Assembly: GCF_006345805.1 (NCBI RefSeq)
Contig: NC_043018.1
Location: forward strand, 8,928,001-8,992,000
Length of the DNA: 64,000 nt
Direction of reading: 5' to 3'
From: Octopus sinensis
Lineage: Eukaryota
Shown piece by piece: positions 22,650 through 56,535 of the stretch (position 1 is its first letter; every line of letters starts with the position of its first letter). The position numbers and the translations under genes are program-made. The notes under the pieces were generated by a model. The model ran no database searches, was not told the DNA's origin, and saw only the letters and a program-made list of their open reading frames with translations.

Positions 22650-22652
22650 GTA

Positions 22653-22726
<74 letters not shown>

Positions 22727-22844: not shown

Positions 22845-22881
<37 letters not shown>

Positions 22882-22990: not shown

Positions 22991-23589
22991 TAATTCCTGT
23001 GAACTCTACTCATTTCTCTCTTATCAAGTGTTGTCCATATTATTATTATGGATTCTTGGTATTCACGTTTCCTGTTTGCCAAATCCTGTTCCATCTCAGA
23101 TCAATAACTACACTTGAAACGACTCTCCCTCTCAACTTCATAAGAATCATTTCCCCAAATGTATTTATGCTAATTACAGTTTCGTGAGCTTTTGTTGTTG
23201 TTGTTGTTATTATTATTATAAATTTATTGTTGTTGTTGTTTGTGCTATTCATATCTCGGATAATTATGGCTTTCTGATCTGTGTTGGTGAATAAGTTGAT
23301 CAAACTGCGTGAGGTACCACTTGGCCGAGTTAATTTCTGTTCTCTTTGTCACTTTTAACAAACCAGGACGTACAAAAACAAATGCCATCTTTTTACTGGT
23401 TTCAATCACTGAATTGTGGCCAGGCTGGGGCATGTCCTTGAGATGTTCTGACGAAGGAATCGACCCCCAGTGTTTATTCATTAAGCCTAGTACTTACTCT
23501 ATTAGTGTCTATTGGTGAACTGCTAAGTTATGGCAATGCAGATAAACAACTACCGTTGTCAAGCAGAGGGGGGGGATAGAGACACACGC

Positions 23590-23934
23590 ACACATACATG
23601 CATATATGTATGTATGTATATATGTATGTGTGTATGTATATATGTATGTATGTGTGTATGTATGTATATATATGTATGTATGTGTGTATGTATGTATGTA
23701 TATAAGTTTGTGTGTGTGTATATATATATATATCTATATATATATACATACATATATATACATATATATATATATATATACATACATATATATATACATA
23801 TTATATATATATATACATACATATATATACATATATATATATTATATATATATATATAATATACATACATATATATACATATATATATATACATACATAT
23901 ATATACATATATAATATATATAATATATACATAC

Positions 23935-23998
<64 letters not shown>

Positions 23999-24243
23999 GT
24001 ATATATACATATACATACATATACATACATACATATATATATATATGTATACATATACACATATATATATATACATATATATACATACATACATACATAT
24101 ATATATATATGTATACATATACACATATATATATATACATATATATATACATATATATACATACATATATATATATATGTATATATATACACACACACAT
24201 ATATATATACAAATACACATGTATATATATATATATATATATA
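23590..24243. repeat. ~650-bp (TA)/(TACA)/(TATG) microsatellite tract
   Basis: Direct reading; source of the spurious YI-rich ORFs. Confidence 0.95.
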
Positions 24244-25612: not shown

Positions 25613-25617
25613 ATCCC

Positions 25618-25940
25618 CATCATCGTTTAAAGTCCGTTTTCTGTGCTAGCATGGGTTCGACAGTTTGGCTGGGGTCTGGGAAGCCAGGAGGCTGCACCAG
25701 GCTCCAGTCTGATCTGACAGTGTTTCTACAGCTGGATGCCCTTCCTAATGCCAACCACTCCGTGAGTGTAGTGCCACCAGCACAAGTGCCAGGGGAGGCT
25801 GGCAGCGGCCATGATCGGTTGGTGTTTTTACGTGCCACCGGCACTGAAGCCAGGCTAGGCGGAGCTAGCATCGACCACGTTCGGATGGTGCTTTTTATAT
25901 GCCACCGGCACAGGTATCACAACTACAATTTCCATTTGAT
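25618..25940 (-). mobile_element. Family B repeat, tail-to-tail with the RTE copy
   Basis: CATCATCGTTTAAAGTCCG begins ~5 bp after the GATGATGAT tail. Confidence 0.88.
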
Positions 25941-25964
25941 ATTTATTTTGATGTTGATGTACCA

Positions 25965-26230
25965 GGATGGCAACAAAGTGCAGAGACGACTGGCTGGCTG
26001 GATCCTAAGAACATTCAGAACCAGAGATAAGGAAATCATGATGGTCCTCTGACAGACATTCGTCCTCAGCTGCCTGGATTACTGCTCACAGCTATGGTCA
26101 CCCACCAGTGTGAAATTAACAGCGGACCTTGAAGCAATCCAGAGAAAATTCACAAAGAAGATTGTCTCTTTGCAACAGCTCAGCTACTGGGAAAGGTTGA
26201 AACAGCTAAAACTCTACTCCCTGGAAAGAA
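25965..26230 (+). mobile_element. Second CR1-like LINE subfamily fragment
   Basis: GWILRTFRTRDKEIMMVL*QTFVL..LDYCSQLWSP....LEAIQRKFTKKI..LQQLSYWERLKQLKLYSLER. Confidence 0.8.
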
Positions 26231-26912
26231 TATCTCTGAGCTTAACTTTGCCTTATGTTGTTTCAGGATCAATACAGTGACCGTCTACTATCCTAGTCAA
26301 TTGATATCTACTGACCCCCTCTCCTCAAAATCACTGCCCTTGCACCTAAATTAGAAAATGTTATGGACCTCATGAAAACACAGTTTGGTAGAGGTGGCCA
26401 TGTTTCACTTTCTATAAGTTTTTCAAAGAAATGGCGAGGAAAGGCCAATGAAATTTTATTGCAAAATATAGGACAGGATGTATGAATAAATAGGGTTTTT
26501 TTCTAAATGCAGAGATTTCCTCTTCAGTTGAAACAAATAGTGAGAAGGATGAGGAATTGTGGTGCCCCTGCAGCAGCAATTCTAGGAAGAACACTGGTTG
26601 GTTTTGGAGGGAAAGGGAGAAGGAAAAAAAGAAAAAATGGATTTGTAATTAAATACTGAGTGAGAAAGTGGTAAAAACAAGAAAATTGTGTTGTAAAGGG
26701 ATTTGCTAATGGAAAAGTACAAAATGAGGAAGTAAGTTTTGGTGAATGGAGGATCATAATTCTAAGTAGGAGTGTAAAACCACAAAAAAAAACAAAAACA
26801 AAAAACAATTGTAATGTGTGTGTGTGGGGGTATGTGTGTGTGCATGGGGGTGTGTATGTGTATGTATGTTTATATACATTTGTTCATGTGTGTTTGAGTG
26901 TAAGTATGTGTG

Positions 26913-27180
26913 TCATCATCATCATTATCATCATCATCGTTTAACGTCCGTTCTCCATGCTAGCATGGGTTGGACGGTTCAACTGGGGTCTGTGAAGCCA
27001 GAAGGCTGCACCAGGCTCCAGTCTGATCTGGCAGTGTTTCTACGGCTGGATGCCCTTTCTAACGCCAACCACTCCGTGAGTATAGTGGGTGCTTTTTATG
27101 TGCCACCAGCACAGGTGCCAGACAAGGCTGGCAAACGGCCACGATCGGATGGTGCTTTTTACGTGCCACCGGCATGGTGT
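26913..27180 (-). mobile_element. Family B repeat
   Basis: (CAT)n-CGTTTAACGTCCGTTCTCCATGCTAGC. Confidence 0.88.
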
Positions 27181-27964
27181 GTGTGCGTGATAAATGGTGA
27201 CAGTAACACTACAGTGAGATTGTGGAATTCTAGAAATGTCGATAATGGGTTTGGGGAATTTATTTGCCAAACAAGCTGCAAGGAATTCCTGTGAGAATAT
27301 GAAGAATGTCTGATAACACAAGACTTTCACTTCTTGGTGTGGATGCCTTCCTGTCACCGAACCTCATACCAAATAAGGTAATATTTCTCCATGGCCAGAT
27401 ATGTTTACCCGGAAGACTGGAAATTAAGGACACCACTTATATGACAGTGACACTCATTTACAACTATCACATGATGTCAAGATGATACACAAACATATAC
27501 ATACATACTTACTCATAAACACACACACACACACATGTATATAAATATACAATGGGCTTCTTTCAGTTTTTGTCCACCAAATGCTCTCACAAGGTTTTGG
27601 TTAGACTTGTGCCTTGAGGCTAAACTTTCTGGGTGCAATCCCATGGTCATTCATGATGAAAGGGGGCCTTTACCAACCTGCCTCAGACCATTCTTGGTTC
27701 TATGATACAAACTTCCTCTTTCAAAGTGATCCAAATTTAAGCCTCCCATCAAAATTTCATGTCAATTTATGTTCCAAACATCAGATTAAAAATGACAAAG
27801 TTATTTTTACCAATTCTTCATTATTTTGAAACTTAAAACAAAGGCAGTGTATTTTCACAGAATTATGGTAAAGAAAGGGTCAAAGCATTGATAATGTTGG
27901 TGTTTGGTGGTGATGATGATGACGCAAGTGTTTATGGAATAAAACTCAATTATGTCAAACATTC

Positions 27965-28160
27965 ACAAGGTCCGTCGCAGGTGAGCTGCAAGATGCAGGA
28001 GGAAAGAGTGAGAGAAAGTTGTGGCAAAAGAGTCAGCAGAGGTTCGCCATTACCTTCTGCCTGAGCTGCGTGGAGCTTAGGTGTTTTGCTCATAAACACA
28101 CACATCGCCCGGTCTGAGATTCGAACCCACGATCCCTCGACCGCAGGTCCGCTGCTCTAA
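27965..28160 (-). mobile_element. tRNA-headed SINE family D
   Basis: Minus strand GGAGGCACATGGCCTAGTGGTTAGAGC...GGTTCGAATCTC (A/B boxes), then GAGCAAAACACCTAAGCTCC. Confidence 0.8.
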
Positions 28161-28424
28161 CCACTAGGCCATGTGCCTCCACATCATTATTATTATTATC
28201 ATTATTAAATAATAAGAAGAACAGAATGCGATTGTAAGCGATTGTTTATTGTCAAAGTGAGAATGCAGGATTTCGCTTCTTCAGTTTCCATTTTGAACCT
28301 GAAAAAGACGGACGGGCTGACGATGTATTGTTCAAACCAATAAGCAATCTGTTACAATCACGTTGCACACTTCTTTCTGTCTCTTTACCTTCACGAAGAG
28401 TTATGTCAATCTTTTTTCTTTTTT

Positions 28425-28625
28425 TTTACTTGTTTCAGTCATTTGACTGTGGCCATGCTGGAGCACCGCCTTTAGTTGAGCAAATCGACCCCAGGACTTA
28501 TTCTTTGGAAGCCTAGTACTTATTCTATCGGTCTCTTTTGCCGAACCGCTAAGTTACTGGGACGTAAACACGCCAGCATTGGCTGTCAAGCGATGTTGGG
28601 GGGACAAACGCAGACAAACAAACAT

Positions 28626-28678
<53 letters not shown>

Positions 28679-28805
28679 TATATATGATGGGCGTCTTTCG
28701 GTTTCTGTCCACTCACAAGGCTTTAGTCGGCCCAAGGCTATAGTAGAAGACACTTGCCCAAGGTGCCACGTAGTGGGTCTGAACCCGGAACCATGTGGTT
28801 GGTAA
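28425..28805 (-). mobile_element. tRNA-headed SINE family C with internal (CA)/(TA) tract
   Basis: Minus strand CCACATGGTTCCGGGTTCAG...CACCTTGGGCAAGTGTCTTCTACTATAGCC; matches 35512-35915 and 50207-50635. Confidence 0.88.
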
Positions 28806-28966
28806 CCACCTTTATAAAATATTATCATTATTATTATTATTCATCCTTTCGGGGTTGATAAATTAAGTACCAGTGAAACATTGGGCCCAATGTAATTGAT
28901 TAGTCCCCTGCCCCAAAATTTCAGTCCTTGAGCCTATAATAGAAAGGATCATCATCATCATCGTCT

Positions 28967-29002
<36 letters not shown>

Positions 29003-29049
29003 CCTGTAATGTGGCTAGTCTGAAAGAGAAAGGTGATTCTCTGTTGCAG

Positions 29050-29162
29050 ATGATTACATTGTGGTACAACCAGAGAATTCTGAAACTCTGAGACGTATTG
29101 GTGCCAGAGGCTGCCCCTGTTTGCTGTTTATCTCCCCATATGGAGTGACTTTGGCTCTTCAG
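29050..29162 (+). CDS. Docking protein exon 3: N-terminal part of IRS-type PTB domain
   Basis: Acceptor attctctgttgcag|, donor cag|gtaagc; 113 nt, phase 1 to 0. Translates (D)DYIVVQPENSETLRRIGARGCPCLLFISPYGVTLALQ. Too short for the ORF track. Confidence 0.85.
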
Positions 29163-29484
29163 GTAAGCATCATTTTTCCTTGTCATTGATGGTGAGATTA
29201 TGAAGTATTTGGAAAACGATGCATGTGTGTGTGTTAATTAGGTAACTGATCAAGAAGAAAGATCTTGAGTTCTGCAAGAAAATTGGATTTTAATTTTATC
29301 ATCTTTAGTATTCCTCTGTTCATTTACTGTTTTTACTAATGTCTGAGTGACATCCCTATTTTAGTGTTTTTGCAGTTGGAATCAAATATAAAACTGTGTG
29401 ATTTATACATGAATAAATTGAGTATTTATTTATTTCTTCATTTCTTTTTTTGTTTAATTATTTTATCATTATCTTTTTTACCAG

Positions 29485-29688
29485 GGATCACTCCGAGTTC
29501 TAGCACAATGGCCTTTGAAGAGCATTCGCTGCTATGAAAGTTCCTGCCAAGGACAATTCTCCTTAGAAGCTGGTCGTGTTGCTCCAATGGGGGATGGTTT
29601 ATATATTTTTAACACACAACCAGGCGATGATGACCGTCTCTATGACTTGTTAGATAAACATGTGGTCAATGCTTTACAAAAAATTCGG
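29485..29688 (+). CDS. Docking protein exon 4: core of IRS-type PTB domain
   Basis: Acceptor tcttttttaccag|, donor cgg|gtaaga; 204 nt, phase 0-0. GSLRVLAQWPLKSIRCYESSCQGQFSLEAGRVAPMGDGLYIFNT matches the DOK/FRS2 pattern WP...IR.Y.....FS.EAGR....G.G.F.F.T. Confidence 0.92.
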
Positions 29689-29979
29689 GTAAGATTCGTT
29701 TTGATGTTGATGTTGTGGTTGTGGTTTTGATAATTAAAAATGAAAGACCTTTTACTTTGTCAAGGAAATGTTTGGAATTTCTTATCATTCAAGGTGTAAA
29801 AAAAATAGTAATTGTTTTTATAAACAATCAAGCATGTGCATTTTCTGTGATGATTCGATAAGCAGTGCCAATTTTACAGTTCTGTGAATGATAATAATAT
29901 TTTATAAGCTTATCATCTGATTCGAAGTCAGACGCCTTATCCATTAGGCCAAAAAAAAAAATAATAAAGAACTTTGAGT

Positions 29980-30272
29980 CAGGTCGTTGCCAGTGCCGCT
30001 GGACTGACTCCTGTGCAGGTGGCATATAAAAAACACCATTTGAGCATGGCCGTTGCGGGTACTGCCTGACTGGCCCTTGTGCCGGTGGCATGTAAAACCA
30101 CCCACTACATTCTCAGAGTGGTTGGCGTTAGGAAGGACATCCAGCTGTAGAAACTCTGCCAGATCAAGATTGGAGCATGATGCAGCCATCTGGTTCACCA
30201 GTCCTCAGACATATCGTCCAACCCATGCTAGCATGGAAAGTGGATGTTAAACGATGGTGAGGATGATGATGA
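29980..30272 (+). mobile_element. Family B repeat
   Basis: GGCATATAAAAAACACC, GAGTGGTTGGCGTTAGGAAGG, CCAACCCATGCTAGCATGG, GAT tail. Confidence 0.85.
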
Positions 30273-30720
30273 TGAAGCTTAAACCCTGTATTGATTAAAG
30301 AAGATAGTCTAATATTATAATATTGGGGCCCCAATATTAGACTTTTTTTTTTTTTAGTCAAAACAGGGTGATTGCTAATGGCTTTAAGCTTATAAAATAC
30401 TATTATATACAGAACTAGTAATTGGTTAGACTGATTTTAGAAAAAGTTGCTTTCAGTGCCTCTAGTCCATTAAGGTGTTAATTGGTGCCATAGGTTAATG
30501 AAGTTGTTCTCTGCCATAAAGAGTAGAACGAGGGTATTGTATAGTTATTGGGTGCTAAGTTAGTTGGTTGGGGTGGAACTCAAATTCTTAGAAACCATGC
30601 CTGGTCATAACTCATGCCCTATACATGTTTTCATGGAAATGGAGCACAATGCAGGGATTTGGATTACTGGATCCTGTCAAAGCATCCAATCCATGCCAGC
30701 AGGGATATAGACATTAAATG

Positions 30721-30951
30721 TATTTCTTTACTACCCACAAGGGGCTAAACACAGAGGGGACAATCAAGGACAGACAAACGGATTAAGTCGATTACATCGA
30801 CCCCAGTGCGTAACTGGTACTTAATTTATCAACCCCGAAAGGATGAAAGGCAAAGTCAACCTCGGCGGAATTTGAACTCACAACGTAATGGCAGACGAAA
30901 TACGGCTGTGCATTTCGCCTGGTGTGCTAACGTTTCTGCCAGCTCGCCGCC
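30721..30951 (-). mobile_element. SINE family A with 15-bp TSD, inserted in the tail of a family B relic
   Basis: TSD TATAGACATTAAATG at 30706-30720 and 30952-30966. Confidence 0.92.
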
Positions 30952-31346
30952 TATAGACATTAAATGATGATGATGATGATGATGAGTGGCAACAAGGAAC
31001 TGGATCTGTGATGATGATGCTCGTTTACAACTATCATATGATATCAATGCAAAGAGACTCACATACGCACATACCCAATGGGCTTCTTTCAGTTTCCGTG
31101 TACCAAATCCATTCATGAGGCTTTGGTCAGTCTGGGGCTAAAGTAGAAGACCCTTGCTCTAAAAACCAGGTGGTGGAACTGAACCTGAAACCATGAGGTT
31201 TGGAAGTGAAATTCTTACTCACAGCCATGCCTGTTCTATGTCTAAAATTAAGACAAGATGGTCATGGCCGGAATGCTTTTAGTGATAAGTCTGTTCAGTC
31301 AGGATTGACCTGAGTTCTAATCAATAATGATATATTTTCTGAAATA

Positions 31347-31888
31347 TTGGGTTGTCCGGAAAGAAAAAGGTCAATAAATAATAGCCATTACATTTTTAAT
31401 CAACCAAATATGAACCATTTTGTTGCACAATGCGTCTCCATCTTTCCTTTAACTTGAAAATACCCTCTTCCCAGAATTGAGGTGGTTTCATGGCAAAGAA
31501 TTCATCAAGGTGTCCTTTTATGTCATCCAAGGAATTGAAATTTTCACTATTAAGACTATTCTGCAGAGACCGGGATAAGTGGAAATCTGAAGGAGCAATA
31601 TCTGGTGAATATGGAGGGTGGGGTAACACATCCCAGCCGAGCTGCAGCAATTTTTGTCTGGTTCCCAAAGCATCAAGTGCTGAAAATAAACTTTCTTATC
31701 TTCCATTTTAAAGGGTTACAGAAGTAACACAGGTTATAGGAACATAAACCTTCTTCCACGAAAAGATAGCTTAAACTGTGCTCTAAATGGAGGTGCAGTC
31801 AAATCCTATTTTATGGACTCAACCATGTTCTAAAATAAGTCGAAAGGTAAGCTACTATAAATTGGCAAGAACTTTCCAGACAACCCAA
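31347..31888 (-). mobile_element. Internally deleted (542 bp) non-autonomous mariner with both TIRs
   Basis: TA|TTGGGTTGTCCGGAAAG ... CTTTCCAGACAACCCAA|TA; retains TRQKLLQLGWDVLPHPPYSPDIAPSDFHL...WRRIVQQNGSY. Confidence 0.9.
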
Positions 31889-32342
31889 TACTATTAGAAC
31901 ACATTGGACAATGTACTCTTAGATGCACTATGGCTGAAATAGCTTTGTAATCTTTTGGGGTTGAGCGGGATTTACCCCTTTTGTTCTGTTGATATCCTCT
32001 GCCTTTGTTTCAGTTAATTTTGGAAACAATTAAGAATTTAATGAAATAGTTTTCATTGTCAAGCTGGTGTTTGGAAATTGAATTGATAAGAAATTTTGGC
32101 AGAAGCTTTTAGTTGAAATCACTTTAAAACGGGAAGTTTGTATTTTAAAATCAGACGATCTCAAGTATGTTTGACATCAAAATGCATTTCAGCAATAACA
32201 ATCATTAGGCTTATTCATAAGTGTAACAAATTGATAATGGACAAAAAAAACTCGTCTTTCAATTCTGTATTTTATTTGTTTTCTTTGCATTTTTTTTTGT
32301 TTTTGTTTATTGTTGATAGAGTTTTCGTTTTCCGTCCCTCAG

Positions 32343-32493
32343 CCTGGTCAACAAATTTCTCACCAAATTGAAGAATATGCCTTAGAAACGAAACAACTTC
32401 AGTCTCTCACTCAATTCTCCATCTGTACACAACACCAAGAAGAAATACCTCGGATTTTGCAGGAAAACTGGAATCTTGTTTTACCATCTTTCG
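32343..32493 (+). CDS. Docking protein exon 5 (post-PTB linker)
   Basis: Acceptor tttcgttttccgtccctcag|, donor ttcg|gtaaat; 151 nt, phase 0 to 1; open PGQQISHQIEEYALETKQLQSLTQFSICTQHQEEIPRILQENWNLVLPSF. Confidence 0.75.
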
Positions 32494-36081: not shown

Positions 36082-36160
36082 ACCTAAGCCAACGAACTTC
36101 TTCTTCCTACATTACAGTGCCGGTACGACCGCCCCCGACTCGACCAGACTTTCTTGCCAA
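36082..36160 (+). CDS. Docking protein exon 6 (Pro-rich, 79 nt)
   Basis: Acceptor aattacag|, donor ccaa|gtaagt; phase 1 to 2 links exon 5 to the terminal exon. Translates (D)LSQRTSSSYITVPVRPPPTRPDFLA(N); a locally GC-rich island in AT-rich intron. Confidence 0.8.
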
Positions 36161-36876: not shown

Positions 36877-37093
36877 TAACTGTAAAATGGTATCTTAGCA
36901 ACTGTAACATAGTAATTAAGCAACTATAATATGGTAACTTAGATGTAATGCATCAGTTTACCAGTTGCAACTTGGTGTCTTAACAGTTGTTCAGTGGAAA
37001 CCTGGCAATTGTAACAAAGTAACTTACAAATGTATCATGGCAGCAACTTAGCAGGGAATGGGATTTCTTAAGCTTTATTTTTGTAACCCTTAA

Positions 37094-37311
37094 CCCTTTC
37101 GTTACCAACCCGGCTAAAACCGGCTCTGGCTCTGAGTACAAATGTTTTGTTTTCATAAGTTCTGAATTAAAATCTTCCACCAAACCTTAGTCACAATCTA
37201 TGTTCCTAACACTAAGCTGAATGATAAAGTTATTTTACAAAATTCTTTGTTATATTTAAAGTAATTGAAAGAAACACAGAACATCTCAAAATAAATACAG
37301 TAATGAAAGGG
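37094..37311. mobile_element. piggyBac-type MITE family 1, copy 1
   Basis: TTAA|CCCTTTCGTTAC ... GTAATGAAAGGG|TTAA. Confidence 0.85.
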
Positions 37312-38388
37312 TTAATGTAGAATATTGTCCTTAATGCTGTACTGCCCCACCTCCCATCCCATCCCATCCCATTTCAGGCTGGCTTTGATGATGAAGCATA
37401 TCAATCACTAATTGAATAATTCCATGTGATTGATGAGTCTATTGTTCCACTGATACCAAGACAGGAACTCACTTTCTTTCAATCAAAGAATGAACTTGCC
37501 ACCCCCACCACACCCCCATCCACTTGGCCATTGTTCTTTGTTTTGTCTTTTCACCCACCATTTCTCCTGATCAGTGCCTTTTATTTACCAAAAATATTAA
37601 CACTTGTTCTAAAGGTTGTTATGTAGTCCTGAGGTCTTGAGCTAAGTAATATCTCTCTCTCTCCCTCTACTTTGTGTGTGTGTGTGTGGAGGGGTGGATT
37701 GCAGGTGAGTTGTCTCACCTGTCTATGACTTTCAGGTGTTTTAATACCCAGTGCTATGAGGGAGTCACCCCGCAGAGTGCTGTACTGCAGCGAACCCGCA
37801 AAACACATACACTGAGTGGGTGCTGTTGATAAAATGTGTGTTCGTGTAATATAAATCCATTGTAATGTTTTTGCATGCTGACCCAACACTGCAAGTAATC
37901 CGTCATTTAGGCAATGCTCCCACTGGTTACCCTAGTGAATTGTACTGATTTATCAGCCAGGTAGATGTGCTGTAGAGATTGAAGCATCTTTCGGTATGGT
38001 TTTTTTTATTTTATCTAGTTTCAGCTTACGAGCTGTGGCCATGCTGGGGCACCGCCATGGTTGTGTACACACTGTTCCTTTGATGGACAATAACTGACCC
38101 AATACATCTTGGGTTGTTTAGTTTCACCCACCTGTGTTCCAAACTAAAATCTGTCTGAGTCAATTTTGCTGAACACCAGATTACAGACACCCCCCCCCCT
38201 CCACCTGTTATTGTACTAATGCAATAGTACAATATTGCATTAGTACAATATTGCATTAGTACAATAATGCAAGAAATTATTGTTGTAGTTGCTAACAACA
38301 ATTTTTTTTGTCAATTCTTTAATAATTCAACGGAAATAAATTTTTTATTGTTTTTCCTTTTTTTATTGTTTTTTTCTTTCTTTTTCAG

Positions 38389-39679
38389 CTTCAGCAATAA
38401 TCAGCTTCCACCCCCTCTACCCATACGTTCCATAAACACTACATCAACCGAAGTCCTCGCTTCGTCACCAGATGCATTTGTCCCCGATTTCCGGTCCCTT
38501 CGACTAAAATCTCCTAACACTGAAGCTCCACTTGAAAGTAACTCTCTCGACAATTCCAACCAAAGTGTCCCTGATTTCGTCTCGAATGGTCGCACAGGCT
38601 ACATGTATCCCTCCGGCCAACAGATGTTAAGACATTCCCAGAGTCTGTCCAGTCCGGAACAGGACTCGCTGTTAAATGTTTTCGAGTCTTCGCCAGAAAA
38701 CAATGAGGGGTACCTGACAGCTTGTCTAAAAAAGAACAACACGGACGGGGGTCTGACGTGCAACTCCGAGAGTAATAATCTCAACAAATCCCAAAACAGC
38801 TTACGGAGACGAAGTCGGCTAAAATCCCGGAGCTGTGAAGATTTGAATTCCTACATCAAAATGTCTGCATTAAAAGATTCTAATCCGGAAACATCAGACT
38901 GCAAAACAGAGCCAAAGAAAGACAACAGGGAAAATGCGGCTGTCAAACCTCCCGTGCCTTTCCCACGACTGCAAAACCTCCGCAGCAGTCTATACTGTGA
39001 CAGCAATGGACTCAATAATTATCGTGCTGCTTCTGTTTATTATGGCAACATTACCAAGAAAAAAAATGGTGTTTACGAACCAGCAAACCCAGGTGTTTCA
39101 GAACTTCGGCAGATCTTCGATGGCGGCGAGAAGAAGATGCGTAAATCAGTTTCGAATCCGAATTTCTTTAACATCTCGAGTAAAGACAACTCTGTGTGTC
39201 CCATGGCGTTCGCTCCGGAGCCGAGCCCCCTCGGAACCAGCAACAAAAACAAGTCGACTCATAAATCGTGGAGAAACCTATTTGCAGACCGACGGCGCCG
39301 GTCAAACCATGACAACCAGCAGAACAACAACAACCATCACAAAAACAACAACAACAACAATAACAACAATAATAACAACAACAACACTAATTCCTCAGCG
39401 ACAACAGAAGAAGGCCCTTACTTGAATGAATCGGTCCTTTCACGTCCTGCGAATAAAGGACGATCGAGCAGTTTCAGCAAGAAGTCTTCCCAGAATTACC
39501 AAGCAACCAGTTCTCAGGTGATGGATACCTATGGCACCGGAGGCATGAAAGGTGTTCGAATGACGCCGAAAACCCGATCTTACCGGAGACTAAAGAGTGA
39601 GAGCAGTGCTTCGTATCTGAATAAATCTCCGCTGAAAGAAGCCACTCCACCTCTAGCATCAGTGGAATCTCTTTGTTGA
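38389..39679 (+). CDS. Docking protein terminal exon: disordered tail with SH2/SH3-binding motifs and poly-Asn
   Basis: Long polypyrimidine tract + cag|c (phase 2); 1291-nt open frame with raised GC. Motifs PPLPIR, PPVPFPR, YMYP, YIKM, YGNI, YLNE, YLNK; AAC repeat at 39323-39385. Confidence 0.88.
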
Positions 39680-39941
39680 CAACTCTTCCTCCATCATGTT
39701 TGATGGCAACGTAAAAGACAAAACAACTGTGGATGCATATGTGTGTGTGAGTGTGAAAGTGTTTGCATGAGTCTGTGTGTACATATGTATATCTGTGTGT
39801 GTGTGTGTGTATGTATTTCCCCTCTAACAGTCTTTCCCTCCAAAATTCTATTCTGTAGATAAAACTACCAACAAACAAGCAAAGAAAAAAAATCAGAAGC
39901 TGTAAAAAGAAATGAAAATATATTCATAAACATATATATAT

Positions 39942-39988
<47 letters not shown>

Positions 39989-40586
39989 CGCTCTATCCAT
40001 ATCTCTCTGAAATTGCTCTGAAGTCTGTGGCCATCCGAGGGCTGTTGGAACCTTTGAAACTCTCATCTCTATTAAAAACACCCAGCATTTATAATTCTTC
40101 ATATTTCCAATGCCGTGTCTTGGATCTATTTTAGTGCCTTATTGTCTCCAACTTCGATTATCTCACTGGCAACTGACTTTGCACCAGTTTCCACATCTCC
40201 AAGTCAACCTCAAGTCAACTTGTAATTTACTTGGGTCGTAGGTGGGAAGGAGAATCTAGACTTCTGATTGGGTCTCTTTTCTGATGTAAAAAAAAAAAAA
40301 AAAAAAGGGATAACATGGTACCTGGGGAAGAAAAAAAAAAAAAAAAATGAAGACTAAAAATTGAAAACCAAAATAAAAATCTGCAAGTTCTGTTGAGAAA
40401 AGAAGAGATGGGCTTTTCTCTCTCTCTCTCTTTCTCTCAGAAAACTTCATCCTATTTTTATTTGATTGTTATTTTGTTTGTTTATTTTTGTATTGCAATT
40501 TGGTGATCAATTACAGGTCATTATTGGTTTCACTGGATTAATCACTGCTTTGTTACTTTTTGCCACCAGAAAAATAACAATGGAGG

Positions 40587-40812
40587 CGAGCTGGCAGAAA
40601 CGTTAGCACGCCGGGCGAAATGCGTAGCTGTATTTAGTCTGCCGTTACGTTCTGAGTACAAATTCCGCCGAGGTCGACTTTGCCTTTCATCCTTTTGGGG
40701 TCGATAAATTAAGCACCAGTTACACACTGGGGTCGATGTAATCGACTTAATCTGTCTGTCTGTGCTTGTTTGTCCCCTCTGTCTGTAGCCCCTTGTGGGC
40801 AATAAAGAAATA
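40587..40812 (+). mobile_element. SINE family A (duplicated at ~45155-45385) with ~17-bp TSD
   Basis: TSD AGAAATATAACAATGGA is perfect in the second copy and has one mismatch in the first. Confidence 0.9.
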
Positions 40813-41680
40813 AGAAATATAACAATGGAATGTGTGCAATTGGGAGAAACACAGATTTATATTCTTTCACCAATATATATTCATGAAAGTGCAAACATAC
40901 ATACGGATATAGATATACGAAGGGGGGCTGAAAAGATCCTGGTTTTTTTAAAAAAAGAAAATACAGGGAGATCAGTCAATTATGATTTCATTCAACATAT
41001 TCCCCTCTCAGATTCACACACTTATTGCAGCAGTCTCTCAGTTTTTCTAAGTCCTGTAGAAGAACTCAGAGGGTTGGGTCTTTTGCAATACCCTTAAAGC
41101 CAGGAACTTTTCAGTGACCCCTCATACATCTATTCATACACATACATAGATGTATGCATACATATGGACATACACCTACTCACACACATTCTACATACAT
41201 ATATATATACATCTATTCACATACACACACATATTTAAGCAGTATGGCTGAGTGGTTAAGAGGTTCATTTTGCAACCATGAGGTCATGGGCTCAATCCCA
41301 CTGCATGGCATCTTGGGCAAATGTTGCTTTCTTTAGCATCGGATGGATTGTACCTGTAATTCCAAAGGCACATTCTTTTGTCATTAATTCTTTCAGATTT
41401 TGTTACACATATTCCTTATCCATTCATAGTGTTTTGAATTACTCGTGCATTATCTCATAGCTTCAAAAATTTGATGATGAGGTGGTTTATTTCTAGAATA
41501 TTATCGGCGGGTAAGTTAGGGTAAGTGTGAGAGGCCAGATCTGGCCTGTTTGACCATAAACCAGGTAGATATGGCTAGTTTAAATGCTAAAGGGCTAAGG
41601 ATATAAAAGTGTTGAGGAAGAAGGAAGGATGTATGTGGGAGATCATGTTACAGTCATGTTTGTGACCAATCTAACTTTAA

Positions 41681-41898
41681 CCCTTTCGTTACCAACCCGG
41701 CTGAAACTGGCTCTGGCTTTGGGTACAAATGTCATGTTTACATAAGTTTTGAATTAAAATCTTCCACCAAACCTTAGTCACAATCTATGTTCCTAACACT
41801 AAGCTGAATGATAAAGTTATTTTACAAAATTCTTTGTTATATTTAAAGTAATTGAAAGAAACACAGAGCATCTCAAAATAAATACAGTAATGAAAGGG
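41681..41898. mobile_element. piggyBac-type MITE family 1, chimeric copy at the duplication junction
   Basis: Left part matches MITE 46252-46474; right part matches MITE 37094-37311. Confidence 0.9.
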
Positions 41899-42973
41899 TT
41901 AATGTAGAATATTGTCCTTAATGCTGTACTGCCCCACCTCCCATCCCATCCCATCCCATTTCAGGCTGGCTTTGATGATGAAGCATATCAATCACTAATT
42001 GAATAATTCCATGTGATTGATGAGTCTATTGTTCCACTGATACCAAGACAGGAACTCACTTTCTTTCAATCAAAGAATGAACTTGCCACCCCCACCACAC
42101 CCCCATCCACTTGGCCATTGTTCTTTGTTTTGTCTTTTCACCCACCATTTCTCCTGATCAGTGCCTTTTATTTACCAAAAATATTAACACTTGTTCTAAA
42201 GGTTGTTATGTAGTCCTGAGGTCTTGAGCTAAGTAATATCTCTCTCTCTCCTCTACTTTGTGTGTGTGTGTGTGGAGGGGTGGATTGCAGGTGAGTTGTC
42301 TCACCTGTCTATGACTTTCAGGTGTTTTAATACCCAGTGCTATGAGGGAGTCACCCCGCAGAGTGCTGTACTGCAGCGAACCCGCAAAACACATACACTG
42401 AGTGGGTGCTGTTGATAAAATGTGTGTTCGTGTAATATAAATCCATTGTAATGTTTTTGCATGCTGACCCAACACTGCAAGTAATCCGTCATTTAGGCAA
42501 TGCTCCCACTGGTTACCCTAGTGAATTGTACTGATTTATCAGCCAGGTAGATGTGCTGTAGAGATTGAAGCATCTTTCGGTATGGTTTTTTTTATTTTAT
42601 CTAGTTTCAGCTTACGAGCTGTGGCCATGCTGGGGCACCGCCATGGTTGTGTACACACTGTTCCTTTGATGGACAATAACTGACCCAATACATCTTGGGT
42701 TGTTTAGTTTCACCCACCTGTGTTCCAAACTAAAATCTGTCTGAGTCAATTTTGCTGAACACCAGATTACAGACACCCCCCCCCTCCACCTGTTATTGTA
42801 CTAATGCAATAGTACAATATTGCATTAGTACAATATTGCATTAGTACAATAATGCAAGAAATTATTGTTGTAGTTGCTAACAACAATTTTTTTTGTCAAT
42901 TCTTTAATAATTCAACGGAAATAAATTTTTTATTGTTTTTCCTTTTTTTATTGTTTTTTTCTTTCTTTTTCAG

Positions 42974-44263
42974 CTTCAGCAATAATCAGCTTCCACCCCC
43001 TCTACCCATACGTTCCATAAACACTACATCAACCGAAGTCCTCGCTTCGTCACCAGATGCATTTGTCCCCGATTTCCGGTCCCTTCGACTAAAATCTCCT
43101 AACACTGAAGCTCCACTTGAAAGTAACTCTCTCGACAATTCCAACCAAGTGTCCCTGATTTCGTCTCGAATGGTCGCACAGGCTACATGTATCCCTCCGG
43201 CCAACAGATGTTAAGACATTCCCAGAGTCTGTCCAGTCCGGAACAGGACTCGCTGTTAAATGTTTTCGAGTCTTCGCCAGAAAACAATGAGGGGTACCTG
43301 ACAGCTTGTCTAAAAAAGAACAACACGGACGGGGGTCTGACGTGCAACTCCGAGAGTAATAATCTCAACAAATCCCAAAACAGCTTACGGAGACGAAGTC
43401 GGCTAAAATCCCGGAGCTGTGAAGATTTGAATTCCTACATCAAAATGTCTGCATTAAAAGATTCTAATCCGGAAACATCAGACTGCAAAACAGAGCCAAA
43501 GAAAGACAACAGGGAAAATGCGGCTGTCAAACCTCCCGTGCCTTTCCCACGACTGCAAAACCTCCGCAGCAGTCTATACTGTGACAGCAATGGACTCAAT
43601 AATTATCGTGCTGCTTCTGTTTATTATGGCAACATTACCAAGAAAAAAAATGGTGTTTACGAACCAGCAAACCCAGGTGTTTCAGAACTTCGGCAGATCT
43701 TCGATGGCGGCGAGAAGAAGATGCGTAAATCAGTTTCGAATCCGAATTTCTTTAACATCTCGAGTAAAGACAACTCTGTGTGTCCCATGGCGTTCGCTCC
43801 GGAGCCGAGCCCCCTCGGAACCAGCAACAAAAACAAGTCGACTCATAAATCGTGGAGAAACCTATTTGCAGACCGACGGCGCCGGTCAAACCATGACAAC
43901 CAGCAGAACAACAACAACCATCACAAAAACAACAACAACAACAATAACAACAATAATAACAACAACAACACTAATTCCTCAGCGACAACAGAAGAAGGCC
44001 CTTACTTGAATGAATCGGTCCTTTCACGTCCTGCGAATAAAGGACGATCGAGCAGTTTCAGCAAGAAGTCTTCCCAGAATTACCAAGCAACCAGTTCTCA
44101 GGTGATGGATACCTATGGCACCGGAGGCATGAAAGGTGTTCGAATGACGCCGAAAACCCGATCTTACCGGAGACTAAAGAGTGAGAGCAGTGCTTCGTAT
44201 CTGAATAAATCTCCGCTGAAAGAAGCCACTCCACCTCTAGCATCAGTGGAATCTCTTTGTTGA
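42974..44263 (+). pseudogene. Duplicated terminal exon with a 1-bp deletion frameshift
   Basis: AACCAAGTG (43143-43151) versus AACCAAAGTG in copy 1; the spliced frame stops at 43214. Confidence 0.75.
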
Positions 44264-44525
44264 CAACTCTTCCTCCATCATGTTTGATGGCAACGTAAAA
44301 GACAAAACAACTGTGGATGCATATGTGTGTGTGAGTGTGAAAGTGTTTGCATGAGTCTGTGTGTACATATGTATATCTGTGTGTGTGTGTGTGTATGTAT
44401 TTCCCCTCTAACAGTCTTTCCCTCCAAAATTCTATTCTGTAGATAAAACTACCAACAAACAAGCAAAGAAAAAAAATCAGAAGCTGTAAAAAGAAATGAA
44501 AATATATTCATAAACATATATATAT

Positions 44526-44560
<35 letters not shown>

Positions 44561-46251
44561 CGCTCTATCCATATCTCTCTGAAATTGCTCTGAAGTCTGT
44601 GGCCATCCGAGGGCTGTTGGAACCTTTGAAACTCTCATCTCTATTAAAAACACCCAGCATTTATAATTCTTCATATTTCCAAATGCCGTGTCTTGGATCT
44701 ATTTTAGTGCCTTATTGTCTCCAACTTCGATTATCTCACTGGCAACTGACTTTGCACCAGTTTCCACATCTCCAAGTCAACCTCAAGTCAACTTGTAATT
44801 TACTTGGGTCGTAGGTGGGAAGGAGAATCTAGACTTCTGATTGGGTCTCTTTTCTGATGTAAAAAAAAAAAAAAAAAAGGGATAACATGGTACCTGGGGA
44901 AGAAAACAAAAAAAAAAAATGAAGACTAAAAATTGAAAACCAAAATAAAAATCTGCAAGTTCTGTTGAGAAAAGAAGAGATGGGCTTTTCTCTCTCTCTC
45001 TCTTTCTCTCAGAAAACTTCATCCTATTTTTATTTGATTGTTATTTTGTTTGTTTATTTTTGTATTGCAATTTGGTGATCAATTACAGGTCATTATTGGT
45101 TTCACTGGATTAATCACTGCTTTGTTACTTTTTGCCACCAGAAATATAACAATGGAGGCGAGCTGGCAGAAACGTTAGCACGCCGGGCGAAATGCGTAGC
45201 TGTATTTAGTCTGCCGTTACGTTCTGAGTACAAATTCCGCCGAGGTCGACTTTGCCTTTCATCCTTTTGGGGTCGATAAATTAAGCACCAGTTACACACT
45301 GGGGTCGATGTAATCGACTTAATCTGTCTGTCTGTGCTTGTTTGTCCCCTCTGTCTGTAGCCCCTTGTGGGCAATAAAGAAATAAGAAATATAACAATGG
45401 AATGTGTGCAATTGGGAGAAACACAGATTTATATTCTTTCACCAATATATATTCATGAAAGTGCAAACATACATACGGATATAGATATACGAAGGGGGGC
45501 TGAAAAGATCCTGGTTTTTTTAAAAAAAAAAATACAGGGAGATCAGTCAATTATGATTTCATTCAACATATTCCCCTCTCAGATTCACACACTTATTGCA
45601 GCAGTCTCTCAGTTTTTCTAAGTCCTGTAGAAGAACTCAGAGGGTTGGGTCTTTTGCAATACCCTTAAAGCCAGGAACTTTTCAGTGACCCCTCATACAT
45701 CTATTCATACACATACATAGATGTATGCATACATATGGACATACACCTACTCACACACATTCTACATACATATATATATACATCTATTCACATACACACA
45801 CATATTTAAGCAGTATGGCTGAGTGGTTAAGAGGTTCATTTTGCAACCATGAGGTCATGGGCTCAATCCCACTGCATGGCATCTTGGGCAAATGTTGCTT
45901 TCTTTAGCATCGGATGGATTGTACCTGTAATTCCAAAGGCACATTCTTTTGTCATTAATTCTTTCAGATTTTGTTACACATATTCCTTATCCATTCATAG
46001 TGTTTTGAATTACTCGTGCATTATCTCATAGCTTCAAAAATTTGATGATGAGGTGGTTTATTTCTAGAATATTATCGGCGGGTAAGTTAGGGTAAGTGTG
46101 AGAGGCCAGATCTGGCCTGTTTGACCATAAACCAGGTAGATATGGCTAGTTTAAATGCTAAAGGGCTAAGGATATAAAAGTGTTGAGGAAGAAGGAAGGA
46201 TGTATGTGGGAGATCATGTTACAGTCATGTTTGTGACCAATCTAACTTTAA

Positions 46252-46474
46252 CCCTTTCGTTACCAACCCGGCTGAAACTGGCTCTGGCTTTGGGTACAAA
46301 TGTCATGTTTACATAAGTTTTGAATTAAAATCTTCCACCAAACCTTAGTCACAATTTATGTTCTTAACACTAGTTTAATGATAACTAAGTTATTTTATTA
46401 AATTCTTTGTTGTTATATATAAAATAATAGAAAGAAACACAGAGCATCTCAAAATAAATACAGTAATGAAAGGG
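46252..46474. mobile_element. piggyBac-type MITE family 1, copy 3
   Basis: TTAA|CCCTTTCGTTAC ... GTAATGAAAGGG|TTAA. Confidence 0.85.
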
Positions 46475-47356
46475 TTAATTATTCTCACACATTCTAAATA
46501 CTTTAATTGTTCTAAATATTTCATTATTTGTTCTTTTGGCTAACAATGTACCTCTATACACAGACATACACACACACATTCCAAAACGAAACTGGAAAGA
46601 GAAAAACTCATTGAAATGAACTTCTTTCATTTTAAACAAATGCGTTGATTACAAAATAACCTTTGATGGAAAAATAGAAATTGAGAAAACAATACCAGGT
46701 CAGAAGGATTTCTGAGAAATGCTATGTTTTTAGAACATGAGGTGACTGTGATATAATTAGTCAGTGGCGGTTACTTGAAAGACCAGGAAATTATTCGTTA
46801 GCAAGAAATTAAGTAAACAAATTCAATGTGTGTGTGTGCGCTTGTAATGTGTCTCTTAGGTCATAGCTGACACATTTAAAGACGTCATCTTCATGCAGTG
46901 TTTCTGGATAAGTCAACCTACCAAAGTCCATCTCCTTTCAGGAATCGATTTTTTTTTTTTTAGCTCTGATAAAAGTCATAATTTTTACGATGCTTCCTCT
47001 GCTTGCTTTTCAGCAGTGAATCAACTTCTGTAAACTTATTGCTTAGTGGCTTTTGTCCATTTGGGACTGTCTTCAACTTTGGCCATGATACAGTGCCAAT
47101 GCTAAGATCTAAAACTGTTAATCTCTCAGCAGTAGTCTGCTATCCTACAGACTCAACAACAATAATAATTTTCACAGAAATTACTTTTTACCTTCAGGTG
47201 TAAGATTGTGGTGTACACTGAATGTTTTCTTAACTTCTCGTCACGTCACTTTTACCTGCTAAGGTAGCTTGAATGCAATTAAGATTTGATTACATATGTT
47301 TTCACTTACACTTGCAGGATATCAGTTCTTGTGCATCAATTTCTGAATTAATCCAT

Positions 47357-54900: not shown

Positions 54901-56108
54901 ACACGTAGTCAACATCATCCTCGCGTAGATATATAGACGTTTATACAAATAGAAACACATACACAAAAACATAAACCGTAAACACATTCACATGTAAGAG
55001 TGTGTATGCATGTAATAACCTGCTTGGGTTGTGAACATCACTATATAGGAGAGACAAGTACAACATTGAGACGAAGAACCGCTCTTCATGAAGAGCCAAT
55101 CTGGTTCCTGGAATAAAGATGGGTTCCTTTAAGTGAACACATAGAGAAATGTGCAGGTAACATCAAACCAAATTTCACAGTCAGATACTCTTCCTGTCAC
55201 CAATCCTCACCTGTTTCTTGACATGGTTTTCAGGGAAGTTTGGAACTGAACATCCCTTATATAGCAATGATGCTTCTATGCAAGCATCACATGATGTTGA
55301 GATGACAAAGGTGCACACACATACAAATTTATATATATATATATATATTTAGATTCAGTTGAATTAGGCACTTAAATAGAGGCACCTCCTTAGTTCAGTA
55401 TAATCTGCACAGCCCACACACACACACACGTCGCATACATTGACAAATGTCCCCTCCCTCTCTCTCTCTCACCCACATACACATTGCTCTCCTTTCACTT
55501 CTGTTACAAACACACCACCTCTTTTTATCACACACACACACACACACTTGGACTCTATTTTTCAAACATTAACAGATAAACTTTCGATTTGTCTTTCGTT
55601 TTCTCAGACACAGACACCCGGCCACATATGCATACAAACACATACACATACCCTAACCCCACCCCCCACAAACTCACTCTCTCCTTCCACTCTATCTCCT
55701 TTTCACACTAACTTTCCCACCCCACTCACTCTCCTCACACACACACACACACACACATCCATGACTCTTCTCCTTCCCCTCCTGTCCTTCTCTACCTCCC
55801 CTGCATTCATTCAATGAAACAAAAGTAAAACAGTAACAAAAAATCCTAAAAATCAAATCAATAAGAAAAAAAACATTTACATTAGTGTTTTTCTGAGAAA
55901 ACCTGTCAACAGTTTCTGGGTAATCTGACATAAAAAAAAAAGTGGAACAAGGAAGATAAAAAACAACAATAGCAAAAGAATAAAAATAACAATTTATCTT
56001 GGTACAATAAATGCGAGAACTTGAACAGGATTGCTTGCGTTTAAAAATAACAGCTAAACCACTGCTGAATTTCAAACTGCTATATTATATAATGTGATTC
56101 TAGCTTAA

Positions 56109-56330
56109 CCCTTTTGTTACCAGCCCAGCCAAAACCGGCTCTGGTTCTGTAGTATAAGTGTCTTGTTTTCATAAGTTTTTCATTAAAATATACCACCAAA
56201 CCTTAGTTGCAATTTATACTCCTAACACTAGCTTAATGATAACTAAGTAATTTTACTAAATTCTTTGTTATATTTAAAATTAATTGAAAGAAACACAGAG
56301 CATCTCAAAATGAATACGGTAACGAAAGGG
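56109..56330. mobile_element. piggyBac-type MITE family 1, dispersed copy 4
   Basis: TTAA|CCCTTTTGTTACC ... GGTAACGAAAGGG|TTAA. Confidence 0.85.
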
Positions 56331-56535
56331 TTAATAACATTGAATAATTTTAACCCATTATGTTGAAATTTTAAGGTCTTTGATAATCTTGTCGTTGAAA
56401 TGTTGCTTGTGTTTCAGCCTCAGATTGTCCAACAATATGAAAATCTGACAGTTCTGCAGAACTTTTTAGTCAAATAAATTGCCCCCAGTACGTTTTTTTT
56501 CTAAAGCCTATATATATACATCTATATATATATAT

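What the first reader, a model, noticed from the sequence alone, without database searches (positions are those of the whole stretch)
37094..46474. 4.58-kb tandem duplication with a chimeric MITE at the junction: signature of unequal crossover between two MITEs
Seen: three family 1 MITEs at 37094, 41681 and 46252. The middle one carries copy-3 alleles on the left (GGCTGAAACTGG..TTTGGGTAC..GTCATGTTTAC..AGTTTTG) and copy-1 alleles on the right (CAATCTATGTTCCTAACACTAAGCTGAATGATAAAG). The switch falls in a 35-bp identical stretch TGAATTAAAATCTTCCACCAAACCTTAGTCACAAT (37163-37197 / 41750-41784 / 46321-46355). Established: non-allelic homologous recombination between direct repeats yields exactly this pattern. 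Inference: a recent MITE-mediated duplication of a coding exon with a crossover mapped to 35 bp. Alternative: the assembler joined two haplotypes or reads through the MITE.
Basis: partly seen in the sequence, partly recalled or inferred. Interest (0 to 1): 0.75.

Follow-up and report, generated by a model that had tools for sequence, protein, structure and literature searches.

The report
MITE-mediated tandem duplication of a terminal exon
In an octopod genome, two small piggyBac-type transposon relics (MITEs) 4.4 kb apart served as homology for a recent tandem duplication of the last coding exon of a Dok-like signalling adaptor gene; this is a clean but ordinary case of transposon-mediated ectopic recombination.

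Summary
Window 37090-41903 and 41677-46479 are 99.07% identical, giving a two-copy tandem array with period 4587/4571 bp. It is bounded and split by three direct 218-bp elements with TTAA duplications and 13-bp CCC... inverted ends, so they are piggyBac-type MITEs. The middle MITE matches copy 3 at 8/8 informative sites on the left. On the right it matches copy 1 at every informative column except 37281. The switch lies in the 35-bp tract present exactly three times. At 37281 copies 2, 3 and 4 carry G, so the A in copy 1 is best read as a later mutation.

The unit holds the complete terminal exon (38389-39679, with stop and poly(A) signals) of a + strand PH + IRS-type-PTB (Dok-like) gene. The gene's best named match is from the octopod Argonauta hians. 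The distal exon copy (42974-44263) is identical except for a 1-bp frameshifting deletion. The Argonauta and decapodiform loci each show a single terminal exon.

Best reading: a real, recent, homology-driven duplication. Unequal crossover cannot be separated from replicative template switching. An assembly artefact is unlikely but cannot be tested without reads. This is a new instance of a known kind of event and is of modest interest.

The parts
37090..37315 (+). MITE A (copy 1), parental left repeat. Element 37094-37311 (218 bp), flanked by TTAA at 37090-37093 and 37312-37315. TIR is CCCTTTCGTTACC / CCCTTTCATTACT. It lies in the last intron of the gene.
37163..41749 (+). Duplication unit, copy 1 (4587 bp, counted from the start of the crossover tract). 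Contents: right part of MITE A, 1.07 kb of intron, the terminal exon, about 2 kb of 3' UTR/downstream DNA, and the left part of the middle MITE.
41750..46320 (+). Duplication unit, copy 2 (4571 bp). Over the comparable 4552 bp it differs from copy 1 by 3 substitutions and 7 indels. Eight of the 10 differences lie in homopolymer or microsatellite context.
41677..41902 (+). Middle, chimeric MITE (element 41681-41898, with TTAA on each side). The left 69 bp are copy-3 (B) type and the right part is copy-1 (A) type. It has no private bases.
41750..41784 (+). 35-bp tract of identity in which the exchange occurred. The parental tracts are at 37163-37197 and 46321-46355.
46248..46478 (+). MITE B (copy 3), parental right repeat. 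Element 46252-46474, flanked by TTAA on both sides. It is 86% identical to MITE A and lies about 2 kb downstream of the stop codon of the distal exon copy.
38389..39679 (+). Terminal coding exon, proximal copy. It is intact: 430 codons ending in TGA and preceded by the acceptor tctttttcag|. It encodes the domain-free, low-complexity C-terminal tail, including a poly-Asn run. Poly(A) signals follow at 40071 (ATTAAA), 40372 and 40801 (AATAAA), all inside the unit.
42974..44263 (+). Terminal exon, distal copy. The acceptor and CDS are identical to the proximal copy except for a 1-bp deletion (CCAAAG -> CCAAG, at 43146/43147). From the acceptor it would read 57 normal codons, then 21 out-of-frame codons and a stop. 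The downstream piece, 43148-44263, matches the copy 1 tail exactly.
37281..37281 (+). The only discordant site in the chimera: A in copy 1, G in copies 2, 3 and 4. It is best read as a G>A change in copy 1 after the duplication.
36082..36160 (+). Penultimate micro-exon (DLSQRTSSSYITVPVRPPPTRPDFLA). It lies outside the duplication and splices in frame to 38389.
991..32493 (+). Upstream exons of the same gene: 991-1147, 3690-3869, 29050-29162, 29485-29688 and 32343-32493. They encode the PH and IRS-type PTB domains. The first exon was not found in the window.
40582..40816 (.). SINE-like interspersed repeat inside the unit, with its duplicate at about 45154-45388. At least 14 further copies occur elsewhere in the window.
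56105..56334 (+). Fourth full MITE of the family, in the same orientation, with TTAA on both sides. It is 81-83% identical to the others and was used to polarise site 37281. Degraded fragments of the family lie at 27734-27883 (-) and 13021-13118.

Best explanation
The ancestral chromosome carried two independent, directly oriented insertions of one piggyBac-type MITE family. MITE A sat in the last intron of a Dok-like docking-protein gene. MITE B sat about 2 kb downstream of the gene's stop codon, 4.36 kb from MITE A. MITE B on one chromatid (or homologue) misaligned with MITE A on the other, and an exchange resolved within a 35-bp tract of perfect identity. The result is the observed product A-U-(B/A chimera)-U-B, a tandem duplication of the complete terminal exon with its acceptor, stop codon and poly(A) signals.

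Shown: the structure, the register, the single switch point, the near-identity of the copies, and a single-copy state in two outgroups.

Inferred:
- The exchange was a crossover (NAHR).
- It was recent. K = 6.6e-4, an upper bound because the two copies may descend from two haplotypes.
- The proximal copy is the one used, because transcripts would be cleaved at its own poly(A) site.
- The distal copy is a redundant, already frameshifted pseudo-exon.
- The event is therefore probably selectively neutral.

The confidence given (0.55) is for the crossover mechanism specifically. Confidence that the array is a real, homology-mediated duplication by either crossover or template switch is about 0.8.
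For: - The tandem array is 99.07% identical over 4.8 kb.
- The three elements have TTAA target duplications and 13-bp TIRs, all in + orientation.
- The outer flanks of A and B are unrelated.
- The middle element matches B at 8/8 sites on the left and matches A at about 19 columns on the right. It has no private bases and no indel at the junction.
- The 35-mer switch tract is present exactly three times.
- The discordant site 37281 is explained by the consensus G in copies 2, 3 and 4.
- Only 3 substitutions and 7 indels occur in 4552 bp, spread along the unit.
- The gene model places MITE A in the last intron and shows the unit contains a whole terminal exon plus poly(A) signals.
- Argonauta hians (76-kb locus) and a decapodiform (21-kb locus) have one terminal exon and no copy of this MITE.
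- PiggyBac families are reported as recently active in Octopus vulgaris (PMC13282606).
Against: - The identity tract is 35 bp and the repeats are 218 bp at 86% identity. This is far below the roughly 300-500 bp usually quoted for efficient homologous recombination in mammals (PMC6071635), which favours a replicative or MMEJ-type route.
- If 37281 was G at the time of the event, a longer 50-bp identity tract (37267-37316) was available and was not used.
- No independent reads or second assembly of this species could be found, so the reality of the array rests on the assembly.
- Eight of the 10 differences sit in low-complexity context (p about 0.008). This is also the pattern of long-read consensus errors, so neither the age estimate nor the frameshift is secure.
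Confidence: 0.55

Rival explanations
1. The duplication is real, but it arose by a replication-based template switch (MMBIR/BIR/FoSTeS) or by MMEJ after a break. The 35-bp identity between MITE B and MITE A acted as (micro)homology, and no reciprocal crossover took place.
For: The repeats are short (218 bp), diverged (86%) and share at most 35-50 bp of uninterrupted identity. For Alu pairs of similar size and divergence, the same chimeric-element junctions are attributed to template switching or MMEJ, because the elements are shorter than the minimal segment for NAHR (PMC6071635).
Against: The junction is perfectly in register and simple, with no templated insertion, no second switch and no local mutation cluster. 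This is equally compatible with NAHR. No data on recombination requirements in cephalopods were found.
Confidence: 0.25
2. Assembly artefact: the locus is single-copy (A-U-B). The assembler either traversed the cycle created by the shared MITE sequence twice, or placed two haplotypes in tandem.
For: - No independent sequence of the species could be retrieved.
- The level of difference between the copies (0.07% substitutions, the rest homopolymer or microsatellite indels) is in the range of allelic variation or consensus error.
- A graph cycle through a shared 35-mer would give exactly this topology (inference).
Against: - The window has no N, so there is no gap next to the duplication.
- A graph-cycle artefact would give identical copies, but they differ at 10 places, including a 12-bp (CT)n length difference and site 37281 inside the MITE.
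- The window holds 0.5-0.6 kb TA arrays and a 600-bp minisatellite assembled without gaps. This implies long reads that need kb-scale overlaps, not a 35-bp one, and would span 9.4 kb (inference).
- Haplotypes placed in tandem would not be joined in register through two non-allelic MITEs.
Confidence: 0.12
3. The duplication is old, and gene conversion between the 4.6-kb units keeps them nearly identical, so 'recent' is wrong.
For: Tandem repeats of this size are good substrates for conversion (general knowledge). The outgroups available are too distant to date the event.
Against: Divergence is uniformly low over the whole unit, including both halves of the middle MITE. No patches of higher divergence or mosaic tracts are seen. 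The chimera boundary is still sharp.
Confidence: 0.05
4. Transposase-driven alternative transposition (sister-chromatid or composite transposition using one end of MITE A and the other end of MITE B) generated the duplication.
For: The elements have intact TTAA-flanked piggyBac-type ends. PiggyBac families are reported as recently active in an octopus (PMC13282606).
Against: The switch between the parental sequences lies 69-104 bp inside the element, in a tract of identity, not at an element terminus. There are three elements, not four, and no new TTAA target duplication.
Confidence: 0.01

Closest known systems
Alu/Alu-mediated rearrangements in human (exon deletions and duplications with a chimeric Alu at the junction, e.g. 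LDLR)
   Same: Two short (200-300 bp), diverged, directly oriented interspersed repeats bound the segment. A full-length chimeric element sits at the junction, and the breakpoint maps to a short tract of identity. The products are kb-scale exon-level copy-number changes (PMC6071635).
   Different: Here the repeat is a class II piggyBac-type MITE, not a SINE. The host is a cephalopod. The product is a fixed or assembled duplication of a terminal exon, not a pathogenic internal-exon change.
Bar duplication of Drosophila melanogaster and other TE-bounded tandem duplications formed by unequal crossing over between two copies of one transposon family (own knowledge, not checked here)
   Same: Ectopic exchange between two non-allelic copies of a transposon gives a tandem duplication with a transposon copy at the novel junction.
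   Different: The Bar elements are kb-long retrotransposons and the duplication spans many kb with a phenotype. Here the elements are 218 bp and the unit is 4.6 kb, with no predicted phenotype.
piggyBac-derived MITEs (TTAA-specific, short CCC...GGG inverted ends, e.g. human MER85-type elements; own knowledge)
   Same: TTAA target-site duplication, 13-bp terminal inverted repeats starting with CCC, about 220 bp, non-coding, multicopy.
   Different: No autonomous partner or transposase was identified here, and the family name in any repeat library is unknown.
Alternative last exons born by tandem exon duplication
   Same: Two tandem copies of a complete terminal exon, each with an acceptor, a stop codon and poly(A) signals.
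   Different: There is no evidence that the distal copy is used. It differs by a frameshift only and has no diverged coding sequence.

Membership tests
piggyBac-type MITE | TTAA target-site duplication on both sides | tested here: met
   TTAA flanks all four full copies: 37090/37312, 41677/41899, 46248/46475, 56105/56331.
piggyBac-type MITE | Short terminal inverted repeats beginning CCC... | tested here: met
   CCCTTTCGTTACC at the left end. The right end reads CCCTTTCATTACT (copies 1-3) or CCCTTTCGTTACC (copy 4) on the reverse strand. Nine end matches were found against 0.09 expected.
piggyBac-type MITE | Small, non-coding, multicopy | tested here: met
   218-223 bp, with 4 full copies and 2 fragments in 64 kb. 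No ORF is possible at this size. No overall hairpin beyond the TIRs (z = -0.98).
piggyBac-type MITE | Shares its ends with an autonomous element encoding a piggyBac (DDE_Tnp_1_7) transposase | not testable with these tools
   No genome of the species is available, and no family member is present in the Argonauta or decapodiform loci.
NAHR (unequal crossover) product | Two non-allelic homologous repeats in direct orientation bound the duplicated segment | tested here: met
   MITE A and MITE B are both on the + strand, are 86% identical and have unrelated outer flanks.
NAHR (unequal crossover) product | The junction repeat is an in-register chimera with a single switch and no added or lost bases | tested here: met
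   8/8 left sites are B type and all right columns are A type except 37281 (a consensus G). No private bases.
NAHR (unequal crossover) product | The identity tract is long enough for homologous recombination (minimal efficient processing segment) | tested here: inconclusive
   The tract is 35 bp. Mammalian estimates are about 300-500 bp (PMC6071635). The requirement in cephalopods is unknown.
NAHR (unequal crossover) product | A reciprocal deletion allele exists or existed | not testable with these tools
   This needs population data.
False duplication (assembly artefact) | Adjacent to a gap or contig end, or copies exactly identical (graph cycle) | tested here: not met
   The window has 0 N, and there are 10 differences between the units.
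False duplication (assembly artefact) | Halved read depth, with no read spanning the junction | not testable with these tools
   No reads are available, and no same-species sequence is in the collections.
Dok-like docking protein (PH + IRS-type PTB adaptor) | N-terminal PH domain followed by an IRS-type PTB domain, then a disordered tail | tested here: met
   PF00169 at 35.3 bits (cut-off 25.1) and PF02174 at 47.1 bits (cut-off 22) in the spliced upstream exons. No family was found in the 429-aa tail. The closest solved structures are the Dok5 and Dok1 PTB domains. Orthology to a particular vertebrate DOK was not tested.

The most novel reading that the evidence does not exclude
The distal, frameshifted copy is used as an alternative last exon. 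When the proximal acceptor and poly(A) site are skipped, splicing from the micro-exon (36082-36160) to 42974 would produce a truncated PH-PTB adaptor that lacks about 370 residues of the effector-binding tail. That would be a newborn, potentially dominant-negative isoform created in one step by a MITE-mediated duplication plus a 1-bp deletion. In addition, the array, which now has 4.6 kb of homology, may be copy-number polymorphic in the population.
Probability: 0.07. Interest if true: 0.45.

Novelty: new member of a known kind. Interest (0 to 1): 0.3.

Why it matters
This is a well-resolved natural example of a 218-bp DNA-transposon relic acting as the substrate for an exon-scale duplication in a cephalopod genome. 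The breakpoint is mapped to 35 bp, and both parental repeats are still in place. Such cases document how MITE load in introns and downstream regions can drive gene-structure change and copy-number variation. This one also gives a short-homology data point for the debate between NAHR and template switching outside mammals. It does not reveal a new mechanism. It is also a practical flag for annotators, because the distal exon copy could produce a spurious gene model or a false 'pseudogene'.

Tried and rejected
- Exact look-ups of the 470-aa and 358-aa ORFs of the two exon copies in public assemblies found nothing on record.
- A homology search with the frameshift-specific 120-aa ORF found no hit.
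- Two metagenome scans were run, one for a degenerate pattern covering parental, chimeric and reciprocal junctions and one for the conserved MITE end. Both gave 0 matches. No independent sequence of the species was therefore obtained.
- tblastx of the Argonauta downstream region against window 46.5-64 kb returned only low-complexity sum-statistic matches. It was uninformative for synteny.
- Rfam and ARAGORN found nothing in the duplicated region.
- The DNA fold of the MITE shows no significant hairpin beyond the TIRs, so it is not a palindromic-type MITE.
- A first gene model that joined 32493 directly to the terminal exon did not keep the frame at any AG acceptor. This was resolved by finding the micro-exon at 36082-36160.
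- Transposase-mediated alternative transposition was considered and rejected because the switch is internal to the element.
- A patchy gene-conversion explanation for site 37281 was considered and rejected in favour of a single G>A change, because the fourth copy also has G.
Full report

Yes.

- A self-comparison of window 34-50 kb gives one long direct match, 37090-41903 vs 41677-46479, at 99.067% identity over 4821 columns. A short third match, 37090-37316 vs 46248-46479, is 89.3% identical.
- The repeat finder shows the same two-copy array, with spacing that falls from 4587 to 4571 bp.
- The window contains no N.
Each is flanked on both sides by TTAA.

**2. The short elements are piggyBac-type MITEs.**

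- They are 218-223 bp long.
- Their ends are a 13-bp inverted repeat. The left end is CCCTTTCGTTACC. On the other strand the right end reads CCCTTTCATTACT, or the perfect CCCTTTCGTTACC in a fourth copy.
- They are flanked by TTAA.
- They occur as four full copies (the fourth at 56105-56334) plus two degraded fragments in 64 kb. There are nine end matches against 0.09 expected by chance.
- Apart from the termini they do not fold into a significant hairpin (z = -0.98).
- A recent repeat annotation of Octopus vulgaris lists PiggyBac families among the recently active DNA transposons (PMC13282606).
- An autonomous partner could not be sought.

**3. The chimera.**

- Copies 1 and 3 are only 86% identical, and their outer flanks are unrelated. 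They are therefore independent insertions, called A and B here.
- The middle copy equals B at all 8 informative sites between 37116 and 37162, and in its left flank.
- It equals A at every informative column from 37198 to 37266, and in its right flank.
- It has no private base and no gain or loss of bases at the junction.
At 37281/41868/46439 the bases are A/G/G. The fourth copy also has G, so G is the family state. The A in copy 1 is most simply a G>A change after the duplication, not a second exchange.
- If that reading is right, a 50-bp identity tract (37267-37316) existed at the time and was not the one used. The exchange took place in the 35-bp tract.

**4. How similar are the two units?**

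Over the 4552 bp that can be compared (37198-41749) there are 3 substitutions (37281, 40335, 40573) and 7 indels:

- six 1-bp changes in C, A or CT runs;
- one 12-bp difference in a (CT)n array, 25 vs 19 units.

K = 6.6e-4, with a Poisson 95% interval of 1.4e-4 to 1.9e-3. Eight of the 10 differences lie in or next to homopolymer or dinucleotide runs, which cover 37% of the unit (p about 0.008). This pattern fits slippage mutation. It fits long-read consensus error equally well. The event is very young in either case, and the divergence is only an upper bound on its age, because an exchange between homologues would have joined two pre-existing haplotypes.

**5. What was duplicated?**

- The long ORF at 38267-39679 matched three proteins (E down to 5e-113). 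Two of them carry PH and IRS-type PTB domains.
- tblastn with these proteins places a + strand gene across the window.
- With splice sites and an Argonauta-guided micro-exon, the model is 991-1147, 3690-3869, 29050-29162, 29485-29688, 32343-32493, 36082-36160 and 38389-39679. It reads through in frame to a TGA stop.
- Pfam finds PH (35.3 bits) and IRS-type PTB (47.1 bits) in the upstream exons and nothing in the 429-residue tail. The nearest solved structures are the Dok5 and Dok1 PTB domains.
- The best named relative is an Argonauta hians protein, 90% identical over the domains. Next come cuttlefish (81%) and bivalves (about 54%). The window therefore comes from an incirrate octopod.
- MITE A lies in the last intron, 930 bp after the micro-exon. 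MITE B lay about 2 kb past the stop codon.
- The unit therefore contains the whole terminal exon: its acceptor, 430 codons, the stop, and three poly(A) signals at 40071, 40372 and 40801. It also carries a SINE-like repeat at 40582-40816.

**6. The distal exon copy (42974-44263).**

It has the same acceptor and a CDS identical to the proximal one, except for the loss of one A (CCAAAG to CCAAG at 43146/43147). Translated from the acceptor it gives 57 normal residues, then 21 out-of-frame residues and a stop. The remaining piece, translated separately, equals the copy-1 tail exactly. Whether this frameshift is real or a consensus error cannot be decided here.

**7. Outgroups.**

- In the 76-kb Argonauta hians locus the terminal exon occurs once (64745-66373). 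There is no second copy in the 10 kb downstream and no member of this MITE family.
- A 21-kb decapodiform genomic locus also has a single copy.
- The duplication is therefore derived. These relatives are too distant to date it or to show the empty A-U-B state.

**8. Mechanism.**

The structure L-A-U-(B/A)-U-B-R, joined in register through two non-allelic repeats, shows that the event was homology-guided. Unequal crossover between sister chromatids or homologues explains it fully and is my preferred reading.

The substrates are short (218 bp, 86% identical, 35 bp of identity at the switch). For Alu pairs of similar size, the same chimeric junctions are argued to arise by template switching (MMBIR) or MMEJ, because the elements are shorter than the segment needed for efficient homologous recombination (PMC6071635). 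The sequence cannot separate these routes.

Transposase-driven alternative transposition is excluded, for two reasons. The switch lies 69-104 bp inside the element, not at an end. There are also only three elements and no new target duplication.

An old duplication homogenised by gene conversion is unparsimonious given the uniformly low divergence.

**9. Artefact?**

No reads and no second sequence of the species could be found, so this cannot be closed. The following points argue against it:

- There is no gap next to the array.
- A graph-cycle error would give identical copies, but they differ at 10 places, including within the MITE.
- The window holds 0.5-0.6 kb TA arrays and a 600-bp minisatellite without gaps. 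This points to long reads, which need kb-scale overlaps and would span the 9.4-kb array (inference).
- Two haplotypes laid in tandem would not be joined in register through two different MITEs.

I put the artefact at about 0.12.

**10. Consequence.**

The proximal copy has its own poly(A) signals, so transcripts should end there and the protein should be unchanged. The distal copy is probably a silent, decaying pseudo-exon.

The array now offers 4.6 kb of near-perfect homology, and a fourth MITE lies 9.6 kb downstream in the same orientation. Further copy-number change at this locus is therefore predicted.

**11. Verdict.**

The crossover-versus-template-switch question and the reality of the assembly remain open. 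This is a new, clean instance of a well-known kind of event, TE-mediated ectopic recombination with a chimeric element at the junction. It is not a new kind of system, and interest is modest (0.3).

Noticed in passing
window 29251-29306 vs 32436-32491: A 56-bp stretch in the intron between exons 29050-29162 and 29485-29688 is 77% identical to part of the exon at 32343-32493. It translates as QEERS*VLQENWILILSSL against QEEIPRILQENWNLVLPS, so it looks like a small decayed exon fragment.
   Followed up: partly
window 29898-29958 (-): Rfam tRNA match at 38.3 bits (gathering score 29), but ARAGORN calls no tRNA in the window. It is probably the tRNA-derived head of a SINE or a tRNA pseudogene inside an intron.
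   Followed up: no
window 40582-40816 and at least 14 other places (e.g. 30721-30951, 8048-8281, 15550-15767, 18642-18861, 62105-62309): An abundant interspersed repeat of about 230 bp (74-90% identity), probably a SINE. Weaker matches to this part of the unit also occur in the Argonauta locus.
   Followed up: partly
window 38208-38271 (and its duplicate 42793-42856): A 16-bp unit, TGCATTAGTACAATAT, repeated 3.2 times. It is also self-complementary (60-nt arms at 83%). It lies about 120 bp upstream of the terminal-exon acceptor.
   Followed up: no
window 22363-24244 and 24789-25388: Two long imperfect TA arrays (528 and 643 bp; GC 26% over 22-24 kb), followed by a GC-rich 61-bp minisatellite (9.9 units; GC 50% over 24-26 kb). 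Both lie in the large intron.
   Followed up: no
window 11403-11834 (-), 13113-13472 (+), 14331-14843 (+), 24109-24741 (+): ORF fragments that look like remnants of non-LTR retrotransposon proteins. Two of them (13113-13472 and 14331-14843) are clearly paralogous to each other. No family search was run on them.
   Followed up: no
window 39323-39386 (and 43907-43970): An (AAC)n tract encoding a poly-Asn run in the C-terminal tail, identical in both copies. The Argonauta orthologue also has long poly-N and poly-Q runs. This probably explains its misleading database name, 'dual specificity protein kinase splA-like'.
   Followed up: partly
window 56105-56334: A fourth full MITE of the family, in the same orientation, 9.6 kb downstream of MITE B. 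It is a further potential substrate for ectopic exchange.
   Followed up: partly
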